Assembly (NCBI RefSeq): GCF_021028975.2
Contig: NC_059427.1
Span: 156,116,001-156,180,000 of the forward strand
Origin: Sphaerodactylus townsendi
Taxonomy: Eukaryota
Direction: 5' to 3'
Length of the DNA stretch: 64,000 bases
The position numbers and the translations under genes are program-made. Numbering within the stretch: position 1 is the first letter of the stretch; each line of letters starts with the position of its first letter. Shown piece after piece: positions 9,837-26,726 of the stretch. The notes below the pieces were generated by a model, which was not told the origin of the DNA, did not search any database, and saw nothing but the letters and a program-made list of their open reading frames with translations.

Positions 9837-9898
9837 TTAACTCCCTAGCGTTCTGGATGAAGGTAAAAGGTGCTTATTTCAAAAGTAAACTGGACTGC

Positions 9899-10049
9899 GG
9901 CCCCTTTCGCACATGCAGAATAATGCACTTTCAATCCACTTTCAATGCACTTTGCAGCTGGATTTTACTGTGCGGAACAGCAACATCCACTTGCAAACAA
10001 TTGTGAAAGTGGATTGAAAGTGCATTATTCTGCATGTGCAGAAGGGGCC
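9899..10049. mobile_element. 151-bp MITE with 46-bp terminal inverted repeats
   Basis: Left arm 9899-9944 (GGCCCCTTTCGCACATGCAGAATAATGCACTTTCAATCCACTTTCA) matches the reverse complement of 10004-10049 at 44/46 positions. Flanks TGC/TGA may be a decayed 3-bp TSD. No coding capacity. Confidence 0.85.
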
Positions 10050-10129
10050 TGAGAGTTGATTGTCCCTGCTTGTACCACAAACCTGTACAAGCTAGCCTGA
10101 ATGGTGTTAGGCTACCTCTAGCCATTATG

Positions 10130-12866: not shown

Positions 12867-13373
12867 TGTTTTTGGCCCACTCTGTGGCTGCCTCATTAGT
12901 AAAGAGCCACCAAAAATATATATTTGTCTTCACATTATCCAAGAGGAATTCGTTCTTTAATTCTTTAAGTGGGAATCTCCTACAGTGTCGCTAGAAATCC
13001 TTTCTGGTTTGATGCATGAGCATCTCCCACGGTTCCCGGTGATATTACGCTTTTTCAGCTAATATGCGCCATGTGCCAGGCATCCTTTTTACTGAGCATT
13101 TTCTCTCCCTTTTATAAGGGAGAGTTCATAAATACACAATCAGAACAGAGTGGGAATAATTAGTCATGTTTACCAACATATGCTACCCGGCCACCTTTGA
13201 ATCCGTCTCAGGGCCTGGGATTGTAAGGGGGGAGGGGGGGGGCTGGAATAGAATACCAGTAATTAGTTTTAAAGCAAATCATTTCAAATGGAAACTCATA
13301 GGTAAAGTCTAGTGAACTGCAGAAGGGGTGAAAAAAAGGATCTGATTTTTATATGACTTGGAAGGTAGCAAGC

Positions 13374-13533
13374 AGACACAGCAATATTTTATTCTGGAGA
13401 GAATAAATTAATTAATATCTCTGTAGCAACTCACGCAGCGGCTCTATGGTTGACTGCATTTAAACGAGATATATGTATCAAGCCTCGCTGGTGTTGTTAA
13501 CAAGAGTGATAATAAAGATGAAAAGGATCAGAA
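13374..13533 (-). ncRNA. HOTAIR: HOTAIR exon-6-like conserved block (candidate lncRNA segment or CNE)
   Basis: Two motifs, AGACACAGCAATATTTTA...GAATAAATTAATTA and CTGGTGTTGTTAACAAG...ATAAAGATG, match the reverse complement of the human HOTAIR last exon as recalled, in the same order and with similar spacing. Transcription is not shown by the sequence. Confidence 0.5.
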
Positions 13534-15792
13534 AGATTAAAGCAAAAAAAATTATTTCAAGGATCGGTGAGAACTTGGGTTTTCCTATGGGCCTGGCTTT
13601 TGTTCCTCACTGATTATGTTAACTGGCCGAGTTCATTAATAATAAAAAAATTAATTTTTAAAAGTATCTCTCTCACCGAAGTTATTTATGTGTGCATATA
13701 CTGGAAGAAAACCCATAGGGCCCAATCCTGCTACTTTGGAGTTCCATAGATTTCTCAGGTGAGTTTTCTCAAGAGATAACAGCACTCCTGATTTTTTTTA
13801 AAGGCCAGAGGTATGTATGATTTGTTGACCCAAACAAGCTTTTATGTCTCTCTCCCCAAAATGAGTGGTATTTGCTCCCATCATATGGCTTGTTTGCTCC
13901 GAGAGGTGCCCAAGGCAGTATTGGATTTTGTCCTCTGTTCAGAACCTAAAGAGCTGTTCCATTATTAAGAGTGCCATTCCATAATTAAAGAGTGGCTTCA
14001 GAGACATCGCTATCTTTTATGGCAAGGCCAAAAGTCAGAAAAGATTTTTCTCCTGGGCCTAAAATGAATCCCCCCCTCCCTTTCTTTGTTTAAGGTTATC
14101 TGATAGGCAAGCTATACTCTAGTCTCCTTACTATTAAATGTCACCCCCTCCATAGTGATGAGAAGGTCTTTTCTATTGTTTTTACAAAACCAGCCACACC
14201 TGAGAGTCTTTGAGAATCCAACATTCATCTCCTGAAAGGGGGAAGGGGAGGGGGTGTCACTTCATTGCCTCCAAGATGTTACCTTCTCCAAAACACATGC
14301 TTAATGGAGATGATATAATTATTAAAGGGCATGTGCAAGTTAATTTCACTGTGATGAAGAAGTGTTAATCTGTTAAGAGGATTTCCCCCCCTAAGCGATT
14401 TTTATCAGTATTATTAGTATCATTACATGAAATAGGCTGGGGGCGGGGGGGGGGGGTGGTGGACATATAGGGAATTCCAATGAATCGTTGCATTCAGACT
14501 ACCCAAAACTAGGGAGAGTTTTCTGCCTCCTGGAAAGGAAGTGCATGGCATCAAAATGTCTCAATAGCTTGCAAAATCACCCAAGTCCCACTTGTCAACC
14601 TCTTCGGGTTCTGCAAGGCAGAAGTCCTGACCAGAAGCAGAAAGTGGATAAGAGCCATCATGTATCTGGTGTTTTGACTCTCAAAAGCTCATTTTCATAC
14701 CCTGAAAATCCTGTTGCCTTCTGAGGTGCACTCAAATCCAACTAGCTGTTCTAAGTAGTCCATTGGGGTTTTTTTTTTCATGCATACCAACTATGAACCG
14801 TGAGAATACACAGGGTGATTGTCCGGAAGCAAATTTCAAGCCCTGGCACACTGATGCAAGTAGCTGGCCACCCTATAAAGAGGGTTTTTAAAAAGGCATA
14901 TACTCCCCTCTGCGGCTTGGACATGAAATTTACCCTTGGCCTGCCAAGAGGTGGGAATAGATATCTGCATTGACTAAGCAACATCTAAACATTCTCAATC
15001 TGATCCCATGGACACAACACTTGGTAGTACAAATTGGCCTCTGTGCACACATCTTTTGTTTCTCCAGGTGAAGATTTCGCTTCATCTAGCAGAGATCTCC
15101 TTAGAGTTTCTTGTTTACATCTAGGTGGGGGTGTGTGTGAAAGTGTGTCTATCTGACGATCCATTCACAAATGTCCATTACATAAACAGAGGTGCCCAAG
15201 TTGCTAGACACTCCCATAAGGATACAGATAAACAATGATATTGTTCTAGGGATATCTAAGCCAGGAGTCACTTTTAAGTCCCCTTCAAACCAAGAGAGCA
15301 TAATGCACCTTTTTGAATCTCACCCCAGCTGACACCAATTGAACTTTAAAAAAAATACAATTGGACTTTTAAAAAAATGTCTTGCATTGGGTTGTGCCTT
15401 TCATCGTTAAGCGTCTATTTAAATTATATGGGGCAAACCTCATTTCTGAAATTGGTCAGCTGTTGTTTCTGTGGGGCCCTGAATAAGACACAAGGAAGGA
15501 CCCAACAACCCCAGCCTGCCTCTGGTCACTGGAAAGCAAGTGTTGTGGATCCCAGGGAGATTTAGGTCTGAGTTTAAGATTTCTCTGCATGTTTGTTTTT
15601 AAAGGTGCAGAACGGCTTACACTCGAGTAGTTCGGCTTCATTCACTGGTGCAGAGGTTCTTCTTCCCAAACCGCTCCCTGATCCTTATTGACTTAGGTAG
15701 GAAACACAATGGTACATTGTGTAATACACTGCTGAATATTATCTTTTCCCCTCTTTTATTCCCTGTTCTTCCCTTGCGGGATATGAAAGGAT

Positions 15793-15979
15793 NNNNNNNN
15801 NNNNNNNNNNNNNNNNNNNNNNNNNNNNNNNNNNNNNNNNNNNNNNNNNNNNNNNNNNNNNNNNNNNNNNNNNNNNNNNNNNNNNNNNNNNNNNNNNNNN
15901 NNNNNNNNNNNNNNNNNNNNNNNNNNNNNNNNNNNNNNNNNNNNNNNNNNNNNNNNNNNNNNNNNNNNNNNNNNNNNNN
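15793..15979. other. Assembly gap (N run)
   Basis: Run of n. Confidence 1.
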
Positions 15980-16209
15980 AAGGTCTCCCCCCAGCGTCTC
16001 CTTATCTAAGAAAGGACCGAATACACTTAATTCTGAAACAAACACAGGAAAATTGCAAACACGTGCAATGGCTACCTGGTTATTTTTAAATTAAAAGTGT
16101 CTCAATTGGTTTGCCTTCCATTAGAAATGATAATAAGAATATCGAAGTTTCTTCGAATATTTTCGACCATGCCTTGATTTTGCAGAAAACTTTCTAGAGA
16201 TCGCCGTCA

Positions 16210-16370
16210 NNNNNNNNNNNNNNNNNNNNNNNNNNNNNNNNNNNNNNNNNNNNNNNNNNNNNNNNNNNNNNNNNNNNNNNNNNNNNNNNNNNNNNNNNNN
16301 NNNNNNNNNNNNNNNNNNNNNNNNNNNNNNNNNNNNNNNNNNNNNNNNNNNNNNNNNNNNNNNNNNNNNN
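16210..16370. other. Assembly gap (N run)
   Basis: Run of n. Confidence 1.
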
Positions 16371-16928
16371 GGAAATATATATATATTGTTTTTCAGTGGG
16401 TTTCAAATACAGGGAAACGTTCACCGTCCTCAAACAACATACAAGAAGAGCCAGCTGTTCGAATCGGGACAGATAATTTTCATTTAAAGGGAGCACCCTT
16501 CAAAGCCATCCCCCCCACCTTGCCACCCCCCCTAATCCCATCTCAAGGCCACATTCAACAGCAACCCAAGCCCTGCAACGGAGAAGTCTGCTCAATAGCC
16601 CTTTAGTACAGCAAGCTAGAGATGGGGGGGGGGAGGGGAGGGGGAGAGGAACCTTTGTTGATTCCCAGAAATGAATCCTCCCCGCCCCCCACACACACAC
16701 ACATTTTTCTCCCCGCCACCCCTTCCCCGTCCCCTGCTGGAGTTTACAGAAAATTGTACCTCGTTTGCTGCCGCTTAAAAATCAGCCAAGATCTTTAGCA
16801 ATTCAGTGAGACCTTGCCCGGCCGGTGCTAATCTTTATTTGTGTGTGTCGGATGACTTCTGTTTACAACTGTCTGTCTGGGTGGGCGGGGGCCGCCATTA
16901 CAAAGTGAAGGTCAAGTTAGCATCCTAC

Positions 16929-17103
16929 CTTATATGGCGTTCTGCGGTCCTCCATTTTCAAGGGTCTGTCGCAACGGGGCGAGATGACCACCCCCTTTCC
17001 TGATTCACGTAAACATGGTCGGGCTCTTTTCTGTTTGTTGCTTGCCCCCCACCCTGCCCGCCCGCCCGGGCGCCGTGCTGATTTGGGGGCGGTGGGGGGT
17101 TAT
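16929..17103 (-). ncRNA. HOTAIR: Candidate HOTAIR exon-4-like noncoding exon (175 nt) with canonical splice sites
   Basis: Minus strand acceptor cctttcctctttatcttggtctctgcattcAG| and exon end AAAGAGCCCGACCATGTTTAC...TGAAAATGGAGGACCGC...ATATAAG|GTAGGA. Recalled human exon end: AAAGAGTCTGATGTTTAC...TGAAATGGAGGACCGG...TTATAAG|. Confidence 0.55.
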
Positions 17104-19081
17104 CTGAATGCAGAGACCAAGATAAAGAGGAAAGGGGGAATTGGGGGGGGGGAACTGTGTGGGAGTAAGACCAGATCTCCTCCTGACGACTGCTGCTTGG
17201 AAACTTCCCCCCCCCACCTCCCCACCCCCCAAGCTTTGGATTTCAGACTTCAAACAAGTCCTCTTTCAACGAGCTGCGAGCGCGTCTGCCGTGGAGGAAA
17301 TTAAACGTCATAAAGAAAAGCCCAATTAGGGTTGAATGTCTCAACATTACGGTTTCCTCCAGAACACAACGAAGCCCGCTCGGTAAGGGGGGGTGGGAGG
17401 GGGGGACGGGTATGGGAGGGCGCCTTTAGATTACCTCGGCTTAAAAGAGTCTTAAACGTGTAATCCTTAAGTAAAGGAGGGGAGAGGGAGGGGGAGAGGC
17501 AGAAATTAATAAGAAAAAAGATAGATGTGGGGAGAGAAAGAGAGTTTCTTGGAAGGCTTGGTGCCTGTTGTGTGTCTACGTGTGTGTAACGATCGGGTCT
17601 CTGTGTGGGCACTCACTCTCTTTAAGCACAACCCCCGCGCAAACAGGCGCCGATCCTCCCAACGTGCCAGTTAGCCGCGGCCAAGATGACCCCATCGCTG
17701 GATCTCCTTGGGTTCTGAGATCCGGCAAGAATGCCTGGGAAGGTGGGTGGCCGGGGAGAGGCATGGCCGATAAGGTAATCTCCCGACTGGGTCGAAGGGT
17801 GGGCTTTTTGAGGTGGCTGGGGTGGGTGGGTGGGAGGTGGGAGCGATAGAGAGGACGGGGAGGCCGCCCTTGGAGCCAAGAGAGCGCCCCCCTCCTTCCC
17901 AACGGCGAAGCGAGTTCTGGGCGCGGCGCGACCGACATTGGCTTCCTCTAAAGCCGGACAATATGATTCCTTTTGGGGGGGAAATGCAGAGAAGGAAATG
18001 GATTTTTAAAAATCTATTATTGCAAATGGGGACTATGACAATCCGGGCTCGGTTCTGGTCGCCGCCGCCACCCTTCACTGTCTTGATGCAGGCCAATTAT
18101 TTCTTTAAAAAAAAAAACCTGGTCTCACGGTGGCTGCGACCCTTTAAAAAAATAGAAGGAAGAACAGAACAAAACAGAAAACAAAACAAATAAAGGGGAG
18201 GGGAATCCCTCCATCACTTACGCGAGAGCCATTGGCATGGAACTCAATCGGACTTTCTTTCCGGGGAAGTCATTACCAAATGCATAAATAAAACATACAA
18301 ACCTCCCTGCAGACATCAGGGGGACTGGATCTCGACGGCTGGATTATCGGGCCTTTCTTGGGGGTACACTGTGGAATCAGCCTGTAAGAAAGAGATTTCT
18401 GTGTTTTTTTCCTGATGTCTGCAGAGCGCCTGTGGCTAAACGTTTTGGGCTTTATTCCTTAATGATGTTATGATGGGGAAGGGCAAGGAACACGGCAGCT
18501 ATTTAGATCCTGGTCCATTAGATAAGCGAACAGATTTTCCAACGTGACAGTTTCTAAAGCCACTTAATCTATACCGTGTGTGTCTGTGTGTGTTCTCTCC
18601 CGACGAATGCCAGATGTGCCTTTTAAGCTGTCTCCCCGTTTTGAAATTTCCAATTATAACTTTGTTATAATTGGGACCTGTGTGGGACCCTTTTGCCCTG
18701 CGGGACAGCAAGTAAAGTGGAAAGAGGATCACTGGGGGAAAAAAATCAAAACGCAGCTTCCAGAGAGTTTTAGTCTTTTCGTCCTTACCTGAAAAGAGAC
18801 TTTTCAAGCCTTCCCTCCACCGTGAATTTTTGCCGTCCTTTCCTTCAGATGTCACCTGCCTACCATGTTCGCTACCTAAGAGTGGGCATGCCCGCAGAGT
18901 GCACCCCTGAGGCGCACTTGTTTAGACATACTGGAGCTTGCTTCTTAGTAAAGAGATTTAGGATTGTGTCCTCGTTATTAAAGGATAGGATGTGGGGTGG
19001 CGGCACCGCTGCGCAAAGGTGTTGAGATCTTGAGATCTCTGGAAATGTTCCCGGACTAAGCTTTATATTTATATGGTAGGT

Positions 19082-19520
19082 NNNNNNNNNNNNNNNNNNN
19101 NNNNNNNNNNNNNNNNNNNNNNNNNNNNNNNNNNNNNNNNNNNNNNNNNNNNNNNNNNNNNNNNNNNNNNNNNNNNNNNNNNNNNNNNNNNNNNNNNNNN
19201 NNNNNNNNNNNNNNNNNNNNNNNNNNNNNNNNNNNNNNNNNNNNNNNNNNNNNNNNNNNNNNNNNNNNNNNNNNNNNNNNNNNNNNNNNNNNNNNNNNNN
19301 NNNNNNNNNNNNNNNNNNNNNNNNNNNNNNNNNNNNNNNNNNNNNNNNNNNNNNNNNNNNNNNNNNNNNNNNNNNNNNNNNNNNNNNNNNNNNNNNNNNN
19401 NNNNNNNNNNNNNNNNNNNNNNNNNNNNNNNNNNNNNNNNNNNNNNNNNNNNNNNNNNNNNNNNNNNNNNNNNNNNNNNNNNNNNNNNNNNNNNNNNNNN
19501 NNNNNNNNNNNNNNNNNNNN
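19082..19520. other. Assembly gap (N run)
   Basis: Run of n. Confidence 1.
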
Positions 19521-19684: not shown

Positions 19685-22600
19685 CCCAATAAGCCTTTTG
19701 TTCTCGGCAATTTTGAACTCATCCAGTTCATTCAGAAGATTTTCATCAAGGCTTTCCGGAAGCTGGCCCAGGGCACACGAAATATGGAAAGTGAACCGCG
19801 GCCGGATGCCCGTGTGTTCTAGAGAACCGGAACAAGGGCTGTTCTGGATCTTTCAGAGGTAGTACCTTAAGGAAGGGGACACCTGAAGCCATGTGCTACT
19901 AACCTTCAAAAGGAAAGGAAGGGGAAGATCAATCCTGGTCCCAATTTAAATAATTAGGGTGCTTTGGGCGTTGTATTTAAAATGGCACCGTGGAATGAAT
20001 TTGGAAATCTATTTGCACTTGACTGCTCAACACTTCCTTCATTTCTAAAGATGTAGTCCAGGGGACAAGGCAGGTGACCTAATTTCCAGAGGTCAGTGTT
20101 TGCTTATAATCGAGAAACTCATCCCTTGCTCAAGGACCAGAGACTCCTCCGTGCGCAGGCGCACACTCTCCCATGCAAACAAAGGGACCGATCTTCCCGA
20201 GCATTGTCCAAATGCGCTCTGAAGTAACGCGCGAGTCTTATAGGTGGGCTCTGGGTGGGCCAAATTGTCACCCTTTTAACTATCTCGGGCATGGGGGGGG
20301 GTCATTTTAGTCTGATAAATCTGAGTTGTGGGGCTGAGTCCAACAGGACTGGACTAGGCGGAAGAAAGCTGTTGAAGATACCCCCCCCCCCCGCCCCTAA
20401 AAACGTTGAGATTTCACTTTGATCACGGTGCGCCTGCTGAGATTGAGGCTGCCTGCCGGCTAAAATGAAAGAGATGTCGGTATCAAGGTTGCCCGGCTGT
20501 TTTTAAAAAGGGTCTTCAACCCACACGGCCCAAATTAAACTGGTCTTCTGCAACCTTTCTGCAAAAGCCTCGTTCGCGAGGGCGCCTCCTCATCTTGTAC
20601 AATCTACCTTCACATGGAAGTTTATATTGTGCGAGACGAGATATTTGATCATAAACCGGGCTCGGGTGGGAAACAATCCTTTCATAGGGGAAAGCTGGGG
20701 TTTTATATCCGCCCTTGCGTTTGTCAGAGTTCCTCTGCGGGAAATAAAGCCTTCTAAATATATGCAAGTCTATTGTGTGTTTTATATGAATATGATTTAG
20801 AGTGTTTGCTTGCTTTTAGAGGGTCGCTCCTCCCCATAGGGCTTATATATATTGTATTGGCTCATGAACGGCCCTCTTTGAATTTTACGCAACGCAATGC
20901 GCTTATAATTCCTTTAAAGCTGACCCGTGGCCCAAAAATGGACTTTTCCCCTTCCTTTGCAAAGCAAAACATACGTCCTTTGGCAGAGTCTAGAGAACTT
21001 GGCAAACTCAACTGAACTCTCGAGAACAAACAAATGTGAAATCCTGTCGATTCGATCTATCAGTCAATCAATCATTCATAAATGACTATAATTGCAGTTA
21101 GAGCATGTACATGCATACATGCATACGTACATATGTGATGGAGGGGTTGTAGAAACTTAAGAGATATAATTATTGTCCATTGATTGTCCGCTCATAACTT
21201 CGTGATCACGAAGCCTGACAGAATAACTTGCTATTGTGCGAAACAAAGCTGCAGTCCTGTGTAAGTCTCCTTGGAGCAAGCTCCAGGGAAATGCGAGGGA
21301 TTTACTTCAAAGTAAACCTGTCTACTATTCGGACTGCCAGACTGGGCCCTTCTGAGTTCTGTCGCTCTCTTTCAGCCAGTTCTGTCGCTCTTTCTGTGAA
21401 GTAGAGCCGCATTGGGACAGAGCTACTGAGACCTGAGGGCGTTTCAGTTTTTCTTCCAATAAACCAAGGATCCTCTGCGATCTGCACCATGATGGTAGCT
21501 TATGTTACACGGATACTGACCAGAGGAGAGTTCTATGCGGGACTTCGTCTCAGGACAACCTGATATCAGAGGCGTTCAGGCGCGCAGTGTTTACTTTGCG
21601 TGTGGCTGGGAAGCGGACAGCTTATCAGCTGTTATCTTTATTGGGTCCACATGATTTTGAACTTGCAGCCCGGGTCTGCGGCAGATCTGAAGCCCCTTTC
21701 CCCCGTTTGGAACCGTTCGCAGCATACACACTATACCACACCGTCTTTATTAGGCTGGCTTATATCCAATTAAATTTATCTTTGCCATTGGGGGATAATA
21801 ATATTTTCCAAGGGCTTCCTACTTGTAGCTATTGTCTCCGGCCCCGGATTTCCTGAGCACACTCAGGCCGCCGAGGATAATCTGCTTTATTGGCGTAGGG
21901 CCGTAGTGCCCATTGGCTTGATTTGAATGCATGGGGGTATTTTATTTTTCCTTAGGAAGCTAGCACAGTATTGTTGCACCAACTATAGCATGGCTGTGCC
22001 GTGCCCAGGCTGAGATCCCAATCAAGTTTACATGGGATTCAGTGAGTCTTTACCTCCAAGGAAGTTCATTCAGATGCTCAGGCTAATCTGATATGTCGCA
22101 GGCGTCTGGGGCTGGAGCTATTTAATCAAACCAAGGCACACAAATGTGGGTACTTGAAAATGTCTGGGTGGCTCTTCCGAACACCTTTCAACATTACTTC
22201 CATCCACAACGAGCTTCCCCCCCCCACCCCACCCCCCTCCCCGCATAGGGATTTATGCTTCTGTTTTATACCCGATAGATGGACAGGTTAACTGCTGCAG
22301 CTTCATCCCCATATTCGTGGGAAAACCAACAAGAAAACAAACCACAAGGATATGAACAAGGTGCTGTATTCGAGTACTTTCTCCCATCTTGCCTCCTTGA
22401 GAGCTGTCCGAAATGAGCATTATCTATATAGCTACCGTTAGAATGCTAGGGAGACATAAATTAATGAACTGAAATTGGTTTGCCTATCTGTGTCCCACAA
22501 ACACACACACAAAATCCCACAAATGTATGGAGGCATTCACTAAATGAAGTGATCATAAAAAAGCTGCTCGGAGAAATACGCTGATAATCATATGGAGCCC

Positions 22601-25226
22601 AATGTTCTATATGGTCATTTGAGTTAACCTAGTGAATGACTCTATAGCGATTCTGGAAGACAAGTGTTCAGATGTTTGGTTCCCCCCCTCAAAAAAATTG
22701 CAGTCTTTGCGCTGGATTACAGACATGATTTTCTTTCTCGACTTGCTAACGGAGCAGATCAAATAGTTTACTGATGGCAAATGTTTGAGTGCACACCCTA
22801 ACTTGGACGCACTAGAGAGGTCAGTCTGCATTTGCTTGTACTGTTCGCAAAAAACCCCCCCAATGTTTACATTTCTTTGGCCAAGTCCGCCACACACATA
22901 AAGGACCATAAGCTCATTTTTAGCCACCTAGAGAGTTTTGCCCAAAGGGGTATTTTGTTCCCCCTGCCCGCCCATATTGTAAGGTGTACTTTAAACGTCC
23001 TCATGGTTGTATCAAACAAGAGATCTGGCAGCGTGGGATGGAAATCAATTAATGTATTAACTTATGAAAATCAGTGTTGAAATACACTTGGAGAGCCACA
23101 AGCAGCCTCCCAGATCCATACGCATATGTCTAATTACACAAGTGAAGCCCTTCTTGACAATTGACATAATCCCTGTGCGTTTTGCTGTGTAGTTATTTCC
23201 TTTCCTCTTCTAGTCTTTCTTTCTTTCTTCCTTTCTTTCTTCCTTTCTTCCTTCCTTCCTCTATTAATACCAGGTCTGGTCACCTGGCCAACAACTCCGA
23301 AAACTCTTTCAGTTCACCTTTGTTGGAATGGTTTCATAATACTAGTAACTATGATGACTGTTATCAGTACTATCATCTTTATTATTACCACGGTGGCTAT
23401 TGTTACTGTGACTAGGATTGTTCCTATTTCTATTTTTTTCTCCTTCCATTTTAAATAGACTTTAACAAAAACAACAAAAACCCACAGCCATTCCTGGCTG
23501 GGAAAATGAAATCTATCAACGATTAAAGAACTCAGCAGACCCTTCGGTTTATTTGCCTTATACTCATTGGGCTATTTTTTTTTAAGTGGAGACCAAAAGG
23601 AATGCGAGACTTCCAGCCTTCATTCTTTTGTTTTATGGTAGGCAGGGAAATGACTTTGGTGGTTCAAATTCAAGTGCTGCGCCTCCCCAGCTGTCTTCTC
23701 TGTGCTTCTTCGCAGGAAGCCGACAAATCCTATACTTTAAAGCGGGCTTTAAAAACCACAACTGCACCGAGGCTGGCTTCAGCTTCCATCTACCTATTAA
23801 GAGCAATAAATTATTCGCACACCTAGAGGAGAGAGACCCTACACGTTATACCCCACATGCTTTCAGCAGCAATCCCTTCTGATGGTCGCCAGCGAAAAAG
23901 GGGATTCTGCCCCTCCAAAATTAGAAGGGGGCTCTACATTGTGTGTTGGAGCATCTTTCTGTCCCCTCCACGCCCCCCCCATCCCATCCTTACAGATGTG
24001 CTGAATTCTTTCTCACCCGGGCAGGTTCCAAAGATTTGGAACGGAAAGGGGAGGGGGGGGAGAAATAATGTCCCTGGTAAACAATATCTTTATGATTGTA
24101 ATTCGTATGAATATTGCCCCGTAAAAGGGCGAGTTGAAGGCTGCCTGACAGTTTAATTAAAAGTTTTGTCCAAAAACAACATCCAACTCGTAAAAGCAGG
24201 GGAGACGAGGGAGCCTATCTTGCTAGCACCCCCCCCCCTCCAGTTTTCTTCCTCTTGCTCATTGCAACCAGGGGTGTTTGGAAAGCACAGCAGAGTATGA
24301 AACAGTGATCATCGAGAGTATTTATTATTTGTCCACCGGCTGGAAAGCTTCTTCCCCAGGGGAGAGAATTCCAAACAGCAACGGGCATCCTATTCAGTCG
24401 GACCTTGTGAGGATCGAATCTCCGGTCCAGGTGGACAACATTGCTCGAGTCAAGGTAAAACGATGGAAGCGCCCGTTTCGTTTTGATCTCGCCTGGAGGA
24501 TTTCTAACGAATGCATTAAAAAAACCCAACCATATTGCAGTACCTCCACTGGGGTTTGCAACCTATACTGCATCTACCAGGGTGTCTCTTTCCCCTTTTC
24601 TCTTTCCAAGACACATGGTTCTTGAATCGTAATAAACTTCTTCAGATTGGCACCTTACCTTTTTTTTTACCGTGTTCCCTTTTTGTCTGCCTAGTCATTC
24701 TCATTTCCTGAGGCGTGTGAAAAAAGCTTTCGGCTAAGATAACGATTTTGCCCGCAAGCCAGTTCTACCTACTATTTAGACAATACCTGATGATTCAAAA
24801 GCCACATAAGCAACCTATCACTCCCAAAGATAATTTTTTTTCAGAGTCAGGAGGCGAACGAGGTCACCTCTGATCCTGTGACTTCTCTGGGATCTTGCCT
24901 TTCTGAGACTGCAATTAGTTTTTTTGGGGGAAAAGACGTCTTCAGACTTTTTCTAAGGAAATTCTTAGCACTAGGGTGAACGTTCCTGAGCAATTCTTCT
25001 CTCCCCCCCCCCCCATTAGTGTTGACCAGCCTGTTATGTTCCTGGATTTTGTTATTTGTTCTTGGGAGTTTAATTTACTGCAACACCAATTGACAGGATA
25101 TCGCCAGGGAAGTCATGTTGCCCTCCTGGTGCTGTGTGAATCTGGTTATGAGGCTTTTAAACTGTCCAGTATTTGAGACAGCAAGAAAGTTAAGGCGGGA
25201 GGATTCTATGTAAACAAAGCAAAGGG

Positions 25227-25394: not shown

Positions 25395-26726
25395 CCACCA
25401 CCACCACCACCACCACCCCAATTCTTTCACGGAACCCTGCGATTGAACGAAGCGAGAAATATTAGCGAAATGATCACCTGGTTCTTAAAATAAAATCAAG
25501 TCCAGGGTGAGAAGACTGAGATATGTACAAAGATGCAAAAGAACAGAAGTAGGAGACGGATAGTCACGGTTGTTATTGTTATTATTTACCAGATGGTTAA
25601 TATTCTGTCCAGAAGCAAAATCTCTTTGCTGAGCGAGTGTTTGTCCTCAGGATAATTTGAATGATAGGAGAATGGTAACCAGACACTCTCACATACAGAT
25701 ACTTCCAAGGATACACAAGCATTCTAACTACAGTCGGGATTCTTGTTATGTCTGGCCAAGACTGGCACTCCACATGCTTCTTAGAAGAAGACAATTTAGG
25801 CTGACAGTTGCCCAAATGTCTTATAGGGAGTCCTTCTTCCAACTCCAAATCTGGAGAATAGAAAGGTGAAAAGACCCAGAAGCACCAAATGCAAGGACCA
25901 ATAACTTTATTTTTTTAAAAAAAAAAATCTTAGTTTTCTCCACATCTCCCCGTTTTTTTAAAAAAAAGATAACTAGGCGGGCTAAAGGTCGCCAGGCGTT
26001 GTGAACGTACATTGATTGACAATAAACAGCTGCATTAAATATTCAATATACCACTCTAACATAATAAATATTTAACCAAATGTTAAGGGAGGCTTTCGAA
26101 TATTTATCAGTCCTCGACTTAATTGATGGGTTCTATCTGTCCCCTGCTCTGTATCAGTCCTAATTTGAATATCCCGCAGTGGTTGAGGCAGGCCTCAGAG
26201 GGTTCCAGTTTTGGGCTTAGACCACCTCAAAAGTTTCAAAGTTTACTGTGCTATTTGGCAGTGCTGCGGAAAGGAACCTTCTCTTGAACAGACAGGGTTT
26301 CTCCATACCTGATATGCCTATGGAGGCATCAAGTTCAGCCTTACAAAGACGAGTAAGAAATTAAAACCTCTATAGGTTGCATCCACCCATCCATCCGTCT
26401 GTCTGTCTACTATCATTGCCACCATAATCATCCATCTATCAGCTATTTATCTAATTCAAAGTCCCGTCCCCCCACTACATGGAGATAGGTCCGCCTTGTT
26501 AAAGTTAGAACTTGATAAACGTTGGAAAACTTACAGAAGAATCTTTATCCAATCCCCTTGGCTTCTATTAGCTGGATCGACTTTTTTAAAAAAAAGTAGA
26601 AACAAAATATGCCTGATCACGCCTAAAATGTGACTAGCGTGGAAAGGAAGAAAGAAAGAAAACACACACACACAAGTGAATGTTAAAGGGGGGGGGGGAG
26701 AATTACAGTTAACACATTCCTTAGAC

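What the first reader, a model, noticed from the sequence alone, without database searches (positions are those of the whole stretch)
16929..17103. Candidate reptilian HOTAIR exon with both splice sites intact
Seen: on the minus strand (antisense to Hox, between HOXC12 and HOXC11) a 175-nt segment lies between a strong acceptor (cctttcctctttatcttggtctctgcattcAG, AG at 17105-17104) and a donor ATAAG|GTAGGA (GT at 16928-16927). Its 3' part reads AAAGAG..ATGTTTAC...AAATGGAGGACCG...TATAAG. Recalled: human HOTAIR exon 4 ends AAAGAGTCTGATGTTTAC...TGAAATGGAGGACCGG...TTATAAG at its donor, and it is one of the two exons with a mouse counterpart. HOTAIR exon sequence is usually described as mammal-restricted. 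Inference: a donor retained at the homologous position suggests selection on a spliced antisense RNA dating to the amniote ancestor, not only a DNA enhancer.
Basis: partly seen in the sequence, partly recalled or inferred. Interest (0 to 1): 0.82.

Follow-up and report, generated by a model that had tools for sequence, protein, structure and literature searches.

The report
Gecko counterpart of HOTAIR exon 4
A gecko HoxC cluster carries the true counterpart of the end of mammalian HOTAIR exon 4, splice donor included, but that donor sits inside an already published, deeply conserved regulatory DNA element, so its survival does not show that reptiles make a spliced HOTAIR RNA.

Summary
On the minus strand, antisense to HOXC12 and HOXC11, a 175-nt segment (17103..16929) lies between an AG (17105-17104) and a GT (16928-16927).

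Its 3' 107 nt are homologous to mammalian HOTAIR exon 4:
- They match Rfam HOTAIR_3 weakly (17.7 bits), and the match ends one base inside the proposed donor.
- They align base for base with the 114-bit HOTAIR_3 site of a camel.
- They are collinear with a HOTAIR_2 match at 13466-13531.

The GT is kept in two geckos, a python, turtles and the camel. It is lost in four bird assemblies.

The donor lies 8 nt from the 32-nt vertebrate-wide HOTAIR CNE of Nepal et al. 2020 (30 of 32 bases here). Conservation peaks on that element and stays higher on the intron side than in the exon. The exon's last bases form a CArG box, and the paper's own table shows an SRF peak at that spot in human cells.

The acceptor is poor or absent in relatives. 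The exon's 5' part is not conserved, and no conserved RNA fold was found. An AG..GT pair this good occurs about 14 times by chance in the interval.

No RNA evidence was obtained.

Verdict: homology is real and modestly new; selection on splicing is unproven.

The parts
17104..17135 (-). Pyrimidine-rich tract plus the AG of the proposed acceptor (AG at 17105-17104).
   Evidence: The simple acceptor score is 6.2 bits, and 102 sites in the interval are as good. An AG stands in the same alignment column in Gekko japonicus and five turtles, but the -3 base is G in Gekko and three turtles and A in one. The python has no AG in register.
17037..17103 (-). 5' part of the proposed exon: G/C-rich, low complexity, not conserved beyond geckos.
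   Evidence: Identity to Gekko is 62%, and to turtles, python and camel 25-29%. Its length varies between species.
16929..17036 (-). 3' part of the proposed exon, the orthologue of the mammalian HOTAIR exon-4 3' part (Rfam HOTAIR_3).
   Evidence: HOTAIR_3 (RF01906) matches 16930-17036 at 17.7 bits over model positions 1-98. It aligns in register with camel L007 2547-2644, which scores 114 bits. Short islands are shared with python, turtles and camel. No conserved RNA pairs were predicted.
16921..16928 (-). Donor GT plus the 8-nt linker to the CNE. Together with the last 9 exon bases it forms a CC(A/T)6GG (CArG) box followed by a GGAT core.
   Evidence: It is 100% identical in Gekko, python and turtles, 7 of 8 in camel and 1 of 8 in pigeons. 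The simple donor score is 8.3 bits. Nepal et al. put the human splice site 8 nt from the CNE, and their Table S7 lists an SRF peak.
16889..16920 (-). The published 32-nt HOTAIR conserved noncoding element (CNE), lying in the intron next to the donor.
   Evidence: 30 of 32 bases match the sequence printed in Table S1 of PMC7139118, compared by eye. Identity is 87-100% in all species aligned, birds included. The read filter tripped on these places.
16830..16888 (-). Conserved block further into the intron (GC/CACCC-box-like run, then a forkhead-type motif).
   Evidence: It is 100% identical to Gekko over about 95 nt past the donor and 81-83% identical to turtles. Only the first ~20 nt are shared with camel and birds.
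17272..17392 (.). Neighbouring sauropsid CNE, 170 nt from the proposed acceptor. It carries homeodomain-type TAAT and TTTATGA motifs and an alternative minus-strand acceptor at 17285.
   Evidence: Identity is 83-87% to tinamou, pigeons, Galbula and turtles and 72% to python. The acceptor score is 7.2. The camel has an assembly gap there.
13466..13531 (-). Collinear counterpart of HOTAIR conserved region 2 (the long last exon in mammals).
   Evidence: Rfam HOTAIR_2 scores 47.3 bits, E 1.6e-8. The order and orientation are the same as in the camel, with HOTAIR_2 at L007 160-228 and HOTAIR_3 at 2547-2644.

Best explanation
The segment is the gecko orthologue of the 3' end of mammalian HOTAIR exon 4 with its donor. 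It lies on the flank of the known vertebrate-wide 32-nt HOTAIR CNE between HOXC11 and HOXC12. Its conservation is best explained at the DNA level, as a cluster of short transcription-factor-type motifs centred on the CNE. By my own reading of the motifs, these are a forkhead-type site, a YY1-like site, a CArG box, a GGAT core, a nuclear-receptor half-site and a GC/CACCC box. This would be a cis-regulatory module acting on the neighbouring posterior HoxC genes. The GT is kept because it sits inside this block (inferred). It may also serve as a donor if antisense transcription crosses it, as in mammals, but that is not shown for any reptile. Shown: homology, register of the donor, pattern of conservation, loss in birds. 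Inferred: which factors bind, and enhancer function in gecko.
For: Homology: Rfam HOTAIR_3 matches 16930-17036. The camel HOTAIR_3 site (114 bits) aligns in the same register. HOTAIR_2 is collinear. CNE identity: the 32-mer printed in Table S1 of PMC7139118 matches the intron core 8 nt from the GT, as the paper says of the human splice site. Conservation profile: gecko-turtle identity is 25-29% in the exon 5' part, 62-64% in the exon 3' part, 100% over donor and linker, 93-96% in the CNE and 81-83% in the intron beyond. The two geckos are 100% identical for about 95 nt past the donor. A human SRF ChIP peak at chr12:54359673-54359803 is centred next to the CNE end, and the paper describes the CNE as a poised or active enhancer. 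Acceptor quality is not conserved. No conserved RNA pairs were found. AG..GT pairs of this quality are common.
Against: Birds kept the 32-nt CNE but lost the CArG box, linker, GT and most of the exon. The exon side is therefore a separable module, and its retention over about 300 million years in squamates, turtles and mammals needs its own constraint, which could be splicing. The two substitutions seen near the donor are A to C at -2 in one turtle lineage and G to C at +4 in the camel. Each breaks a putative factor motif yet is tolerated by a donor, though two events carry no statistical weight. In mammals the same GT is a real donor. Nepal et al. list host-transcript evidence over the HoxC CNE in coelacanth. 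The factor assignments other than SRF rest on my own knowledge of consensus motifs.
Confidence: 0.6

Rival explanations
1. The segment is a working exon of a spliced HOTAIR-like antisense lncRNA in geckos. The donor at 16928 is used, and it has been kept by selection on the RNA since the amniote ancestor, with secondary loss in birds. This is compatible with an enhancer role as well.
For: The donor is at the exact homologous position and fits the consensus at 7 of 9 positions. It is kept in squamates, turtles and camel. An AG stands in the same column in two geckos and five turtles. The HOTAIR_2 counterpart lies collinear downstream. Exon and donor were lost together in birds while the CNE stayed. 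Nepal et al. found no HOTAIR transcript model in chicken, and list a host transcript in coelacanth.
Against: The donor cannot be separated from the CNE block. The acceptor has an unfavourable -3 G in Gekko and most turtles and is absent in register in the python. The exon 5' part is unconserved. There is no conserved fold. The bird HoxC region is very GC-rich and fast-evolving, so loss there may be neutral.
Confidence: 0.35
2. The AG..GT pair and the resemblance to HOTAIR exon 4 are chance, and the segment has no relation to the mammalian exon.
For: The Rfam score (17.7 bits) is far below the gathering score of 80. Pairs of splice-like sites of this quality occur about 14 times in the interval.
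Against: The segment aligns in register to the camel HOTAIR_3 site, with E 1.8e-22 including the CNE. The same islands appear in python and turtles. It is collinear with HOTAIR_2. It adjoins the published CNE at the published distance from the splice site.
Confidence: 0.02

Closest known systems
HOTAIR conserved noncoding element (Nepal et al. 2020, iScience, PMC7139118)
   Same: The same 32-nt element (30 of 32 bases) lies in the same place between HOXC11 and HOXC12, in the same orientation, 8 nt from the same GT. The paper already lists it in alligator, painted turtle, frog, coelacanth, gar and elephant shark, and notes that its flanks align across vertebrates.
   Different: No squamate is in their table. 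Birds are listed as lacking the HoxC copy for want of assembly, whereas four bird assemblies here carry it. The paper does not discuss retention of the exon side or of the donor outside mammals.
Mammalian HOTAIR exon 4 (Rfam HOTAIR_3, RF01906)
   Same: The position, strand and 3' boundary agree, as do several sequence islands and the donor GT.
   Different: The score is 17.7 bits against a gathering score of 80. The 5' part and the acceptor are not alignable with confidence. Transcription and splicing are untested in reptiles. He et al. 2011 (PMC3103462) found HOTAIR exons only in mammals, and Yu et al. 2012 (PMC3541083) found exons 4-6 in a marsupial.
Serum response element of the c-fos type (CArG box with an adjacent Ets-type GGAT core)
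   Same: A perfect CC(A/T)6GG box is followed one base later by a GGAT core. SRF is bound at the orthologous human site.
   Different: The arrangement is mirrored relative to c-fos (own knowledge). Binding in gecko is not tested. The camel lacks the GGA core, and one turtle lineage has a C in the CArG core.

Membership tests
HOTAIR lncRNA (exon 4 orthologue) | Lies between HOXC11 and HOXC12, antisense to them | tested here: met
   HOXC12 and HOXC11 are on the + strand. The HOTAIR-sense reading is on the minus strand. Its orientation relative to HOXC11 is the same as in the camel.
HOTAIR lncRNA (exon 4 orthologue) | Reaches the Rfam HOTAIR_3 gathering score (80 bits) | tested here: not met
   17.7 bits. 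The match is significant only as a targeted single-family test.
HOTAIR lncRNA (exon 4 orthologue) | Aligns in register with a mammal's exon-4 site and shares its 3' boundary and donor GT | tested here: met
   Camel L007 2547 corresponds to window 16930. GT is present in both. It lies 8 nt from the CNE, as published.
HOTAIR lncRNA (exon 4 orthologue) | Collinear with other HOTAIR conserved regions | tested here: met
   HOTAIR_2 is at 13466-13531 (E 1.6e-8), in the same order as in the camel. HOTAIR_1, 4 and 5 were not found.
HOTAIR lncRNA (exon 4 orthologue) | Acceptor at the homologous position | tested here: inconclusive
   An AG is in register in geckos and turtles but with poor -3 bases, and is absent in the python. 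The camel register depends on the alignment. The mammalian exon start is not available from a tool.
HOTAIR lncRNA (exon 4 orthologue) | Transcribed and spliced in posterior or distal tissues | not testable with these tools
RNA runs X6-X8 of a close relative exist.
HOTAIR CNE / embedded enhancer (Nepal 2020) | The 32-nt element is present in HoxC between C11 and C12 | tested here: met
   30 of 32 bases match the printed sequence.
HOTAIR CNE / embedded enhancer (Nepal 2020) | Enhancer chromatin and factor binding | not testable with these tools
   Only human and mouse data from the paper are available.
HOTAIR CNE / embedded enhancer (Nepal 2020) | Paralogous copy between HOXD11 and HOXD12 | not tested
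   The HoxD cluster is not in the window.

The most novel reading that the evidence does not exclude
Non-avian reptiles make a spliced HOTAIR-like antisense RNA that uses this donor. On that reading the exon 4 to exon 6 core of HOTAIR predates the mammal-sauropsid split, and was lost in birds together with the donor while the embedded 32-nt element stayed.
Probability: 0.35. Interest if true: 0.6.

Novelty: new member of a known kind. Interest (0 to 1): 0.4.

Why it matters
HOTAIR is a textbook lncRNA, and its age and mode of action (RNA versus DNA element) are disputed. One study concluded that it exists only in mammals (PMC3103462). A later one showed that one 32-nt element is vertebrate-wide and enhancer-like (PMC7139118). 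This locus extends the alignable part in squamates and turtles to about 100 nt of exon 4 and its donor, and shows a clean split in birds, where the element is kept and the exon and donor are lost. That gives a direct test: if reptiles splice here and birds do not transcribe it, the RNA is ancient. As it stands, the sequence alone does not decide, and the core conservation is already published.

Tried and rejected
- **RNA reads.** The look-up of sequencing runs gave three RNA raw-read runs of a close relative.
- Local scripts only re-read alignments, loci and the window already in hand.
- **Rfam at gathering thresholds.** It finds only mir-196 in the window.
- **Loci that did not reach the exon.** These were Sceloporus, Anolis sagrei, Galbula and the tinamou. 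Monodelphis gave no DNA and Paroedura was not on record.
- **Conserved RNA structure of the exon 3' part.** None was predicted.
- **Literature.** Searches for a reptile HOTAIR transcript found none.
- **Alternative acceptor at 17030.** It sits at the start of the conserved part but was rejected, with a score of -2.7 and no pyrimidine tract.
- **Weak Rfam miRNA-like hits around 16623-16736 and 17134-17224.** They are G-run/C-run hairpins at E of about 1 and were dismissed.
- **HOXC11 search.** It used exon 1 alone, by reference. The joined coding sequence was not built.
- **Human sequence.** No human contig was fetched. The human 32-mer was only read in the paper's table.

Full report
**Setting.** The window is a HoxC cluster on the + strand. 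It holds HOXC12 (exon 1 from 1755, homeobox exon to 3863), HOXC11 (27226-, homeobox exon to 29541), HOXC10, mir-196 (47535-47608, 87 bits) and HOXC9.
- HOXC11 exon 1, searched alone by reference, is 93% identical to Gekko japonicus and 92% to Paroedura picta. The joined coding sequence was not built.
- Intergenic DNA aligns to Gekko japonicus at about 70-74%. The animal is therefore a gecko that is not close to Gekko.

**Observation.** On the minus strand, AG is at 17105-17104 after a pyrimidine-rich tract. The proposed exon is 17103..16929 (175 nt), and GT is at 16928-16927 in an AAG|GTAGGA context. All of this is as stated.
- The sites alone are not remarkable. A simple weight-matrix scan of the minus strand of 3864-27225 finds 13 donors and 102 acceptors at least as good.
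- It also finds 14 pairs, 50-300 nt apart, that are as good.
- Alternative acceptors stand at 17154 and 17285.

**Homology to HOTAIR.**
- At gathering thresholds Rfam reports nothing here.
- With E-value thresholds, HOTAIR_3 (RF01906) matches 16930-17036 over the whole model at 17.7 bits. E is 6.4 for 4227 families in 23 kb, and 0.067 in a 241-nt search. HOTAIR_2 matches 13466-13531 at 47.3 bits, E 1.6e-8.
- Both hits are reported on the + strand. The camel locus L007, oriented with HOXC11 on +, gives HOTAIR_3 (114 bits, 2547-2644), HOTAIR_2 and HOTAIR_1 on the + strand too, in the same order.
- The Rfam models are therefore written in the Hox-sense strand, and the window's HOTAIR-sense reading is the minus strand.
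- Model position 1 falls at 16930, one base inside the proposed donor.
- Window 16875-16957 aligns to camel 2492-2574 at 87% (E 1.8e-22), in exactly the register that puts camel 2547 opposite 16930.

- Ten-kilobase upstream flanks of HOXC11 were fetched for Gekko japonicus, the python Liasis olivaceus, five testudinoid turtles, three pigeon-family assemblies, one further bird, a tinamou, Galbula, Sceloporus, Anolis sagrei and Camelus ferus.
- Those that reach the site show the donor and its surroundings unchanged in Gekko, python and turtles. One turtle lineage has a C at -2. The camel has one change at +4.
- In the pigeons and the further bird, the GT, the 8 nt after it and most of the exon have diverged in a GC-rich direction. 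The next about 45 nt are kept.

**What the conserved core is.**
- Nepal et al. 2020 (PMC7139118) described a 32-nt HOTAIR conserved noncoding element (CNE). It lies in the intron, eight nucleotides from a splice site, has a paralogue between HOXD11 and HOXD12, and shows poised or active enhancer marks.
- The 32-mer printed in their Table S1 is the intron core next to this donor. By eye the gecko matches 30 of 32 bases, and it starts 8 nt after the exon end.
- Their table lists the HoxC copy in alligator, painted turtle, frog, coelacanth, gar and elephant shark. It lists no squamate, and marks birds as lacking it for want of assembly.
The exon-side extension in squamates and turtles, and the bird pattern, are additions.

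**Pattern of constraint (gecko versus turtles).**

| Segment | Identity |
|---|---|
| Acceptor flank | 50-53% |
| Exon 5' part | 25-29% |
| Exon 3' part | 62-64% |
| Donor plus linker | 100% |
| CNE | 93-96% |
| Next 59 nt of intron | 81-83% |

- Between the two geckos, identity is 100% for about 95 nt past the donor, while the exon's middle is the least conserved part.
- Conservation is thus a peak on the CNE that falls off on both sides. It is not a block bounded by splice sites.
- The conserved islands read as familiar factor motifs. This reading rests on my own knowledge and is not a tool result.
  - Exon side: a forkhead-type TGTTTAC, a YY1-like AAAATGGAGG, and a perfect CC(A/T)6GG CArG box made of the last nine exon bases plus the G of GT.
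  - Linker: a GGAT core.
  - CNE: a TGACCT half-site and a GC/CACCC run.
  - Further into the intron: a second forkhead motif.
- The camel has a different but still perfect CArG box.
- Table S7 of the same paper lists a narrow SRF ChIP peak in human embryonic stem cells at chr12:54359673-54359803, centred beside the CNE end, as the strongest factor-specific peak.
- Every conserved base of the donor therefore has a DNA-level explanation.

**Acceptor and RNA-level signals.**
- An AG stands in the same column in Gekko and all five turtles. The -3 base is G in Gekko and three turtles, A in one and C in one.
- The python has no AG in register and carries a GAAA microsatellite in the exon's 5' part.
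- The camel's register there depends on the alignment, and I have no tool-derived mammalian exon start.
- RNAalifold on the exon 3' part of seven species predicts no conserved pair.

**RNA evidence.**
- The look-up of sequencing runs found DNA-like holders and three 2026 RNA raw-read runs of a species sharing 48% of sampled words. By my estimate that is about 2% divergence.
No read evidence exists.
- Those places are the donor, the linker and most of the CNE. Local scripts only re-read material already in hand.

**Weighing.**
- Homology of the 3' part and of the donor position is secure.
- The claim that the retained GT shows selection on splicing is not. The GT cannot be separated from a known enhancer-like element, the acceptor is weakly conserved, and birds lack the donor.
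- Points for an RNA role:
  - The exon and donor form a module that birds lost while keeping the CNE, so it carries its own constraint elsewhere.
  - The two substitutions seen near the donor spare its critical bases.
  - The same GT is a donor in mammals.
  - A host transcript over the HoxC CNE is listed for coelacanth.
- I give 0.6 to the DNA-level reading as the main cause of conservation. I give 0.35 to real use as a donor in geckos; the two can coexist. For the exact 175-nt exon as drawn, about 0.2.

**Literature.** He et al. [quoted passage not shown] Yu et al. 2012 found exons 4-6 in a marsupial and weak conservation in frog. Searches for a reptile HOTAIR transcript found nothing.

**Earlier scan note.** Note s1-758287, on an exon-6-like block at 13374-13533, agrees with the HOTAIR_2 match.

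Noticed in passing
L013 1584-1626, L014 1638-1682, L015 1491-1535, L016 about 1000-1070: Four bird assemblies carry the HoxC copy of the 32-nt HOTAIR CNE. Nepal et al. 2020 listed it as missing in birds for want of an assembled HoxC cluster. In these birds the adjoining CArG box, linker and GT are gone.
   Followed up: partly
window 17272-17392: A sauropsid-wide conserved element (83-87% to tinamou, pigeons, Galbula and turtles) with TAAT and TTTATGA homeodomain-type motifs and a conserved pyrimidine tract plus CAG on the minus strand. The camel has an assembly gap there, so its status in mammals is unknown.
   Followed up: partly
window 21594-21896, 23503-23882, 24050-24202, 25021-25224, 25983-26136: A further series of conserved noncoding blocks upstream of HOXC11 is shared with snakes, iguanians, turtles and birds. 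Block 23631-23699 is also shared with the camel.
   Followed up: no
window 9894-10052: A long near-perfect inverted repeat matches Rfam MIR3440 (a plant miRNA family) on both strands at 54-57 bits, below its gathering score of 105. It is most likely a hairpin-forming repeat, not a member of that family.
   Followed up: no
window 13000-18900 (runs X1-X3): Three runs of only 1.5-2.5 thousand million letters each hold 85% of the sampled words of this intergenic stretch. By my estimate that is more than plain low-coverage genome sequencing of a gecko-sized genome should give.
   Followed up: no
window 15793-15979, 16210-16370, 19082-19520 and five more: Eight runs of N (143-439 nt) interrupt the window, three of them within the HOXC12-HOXC11 interval. 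They were left as they are.
   Followed up: no
L002 about 150-260 (python): The python has a GAAA microsatellite in place of the G/C-rich 5' part of the proposed exon, and no AG in register with the gecko acceptor.
   Followed up: partly
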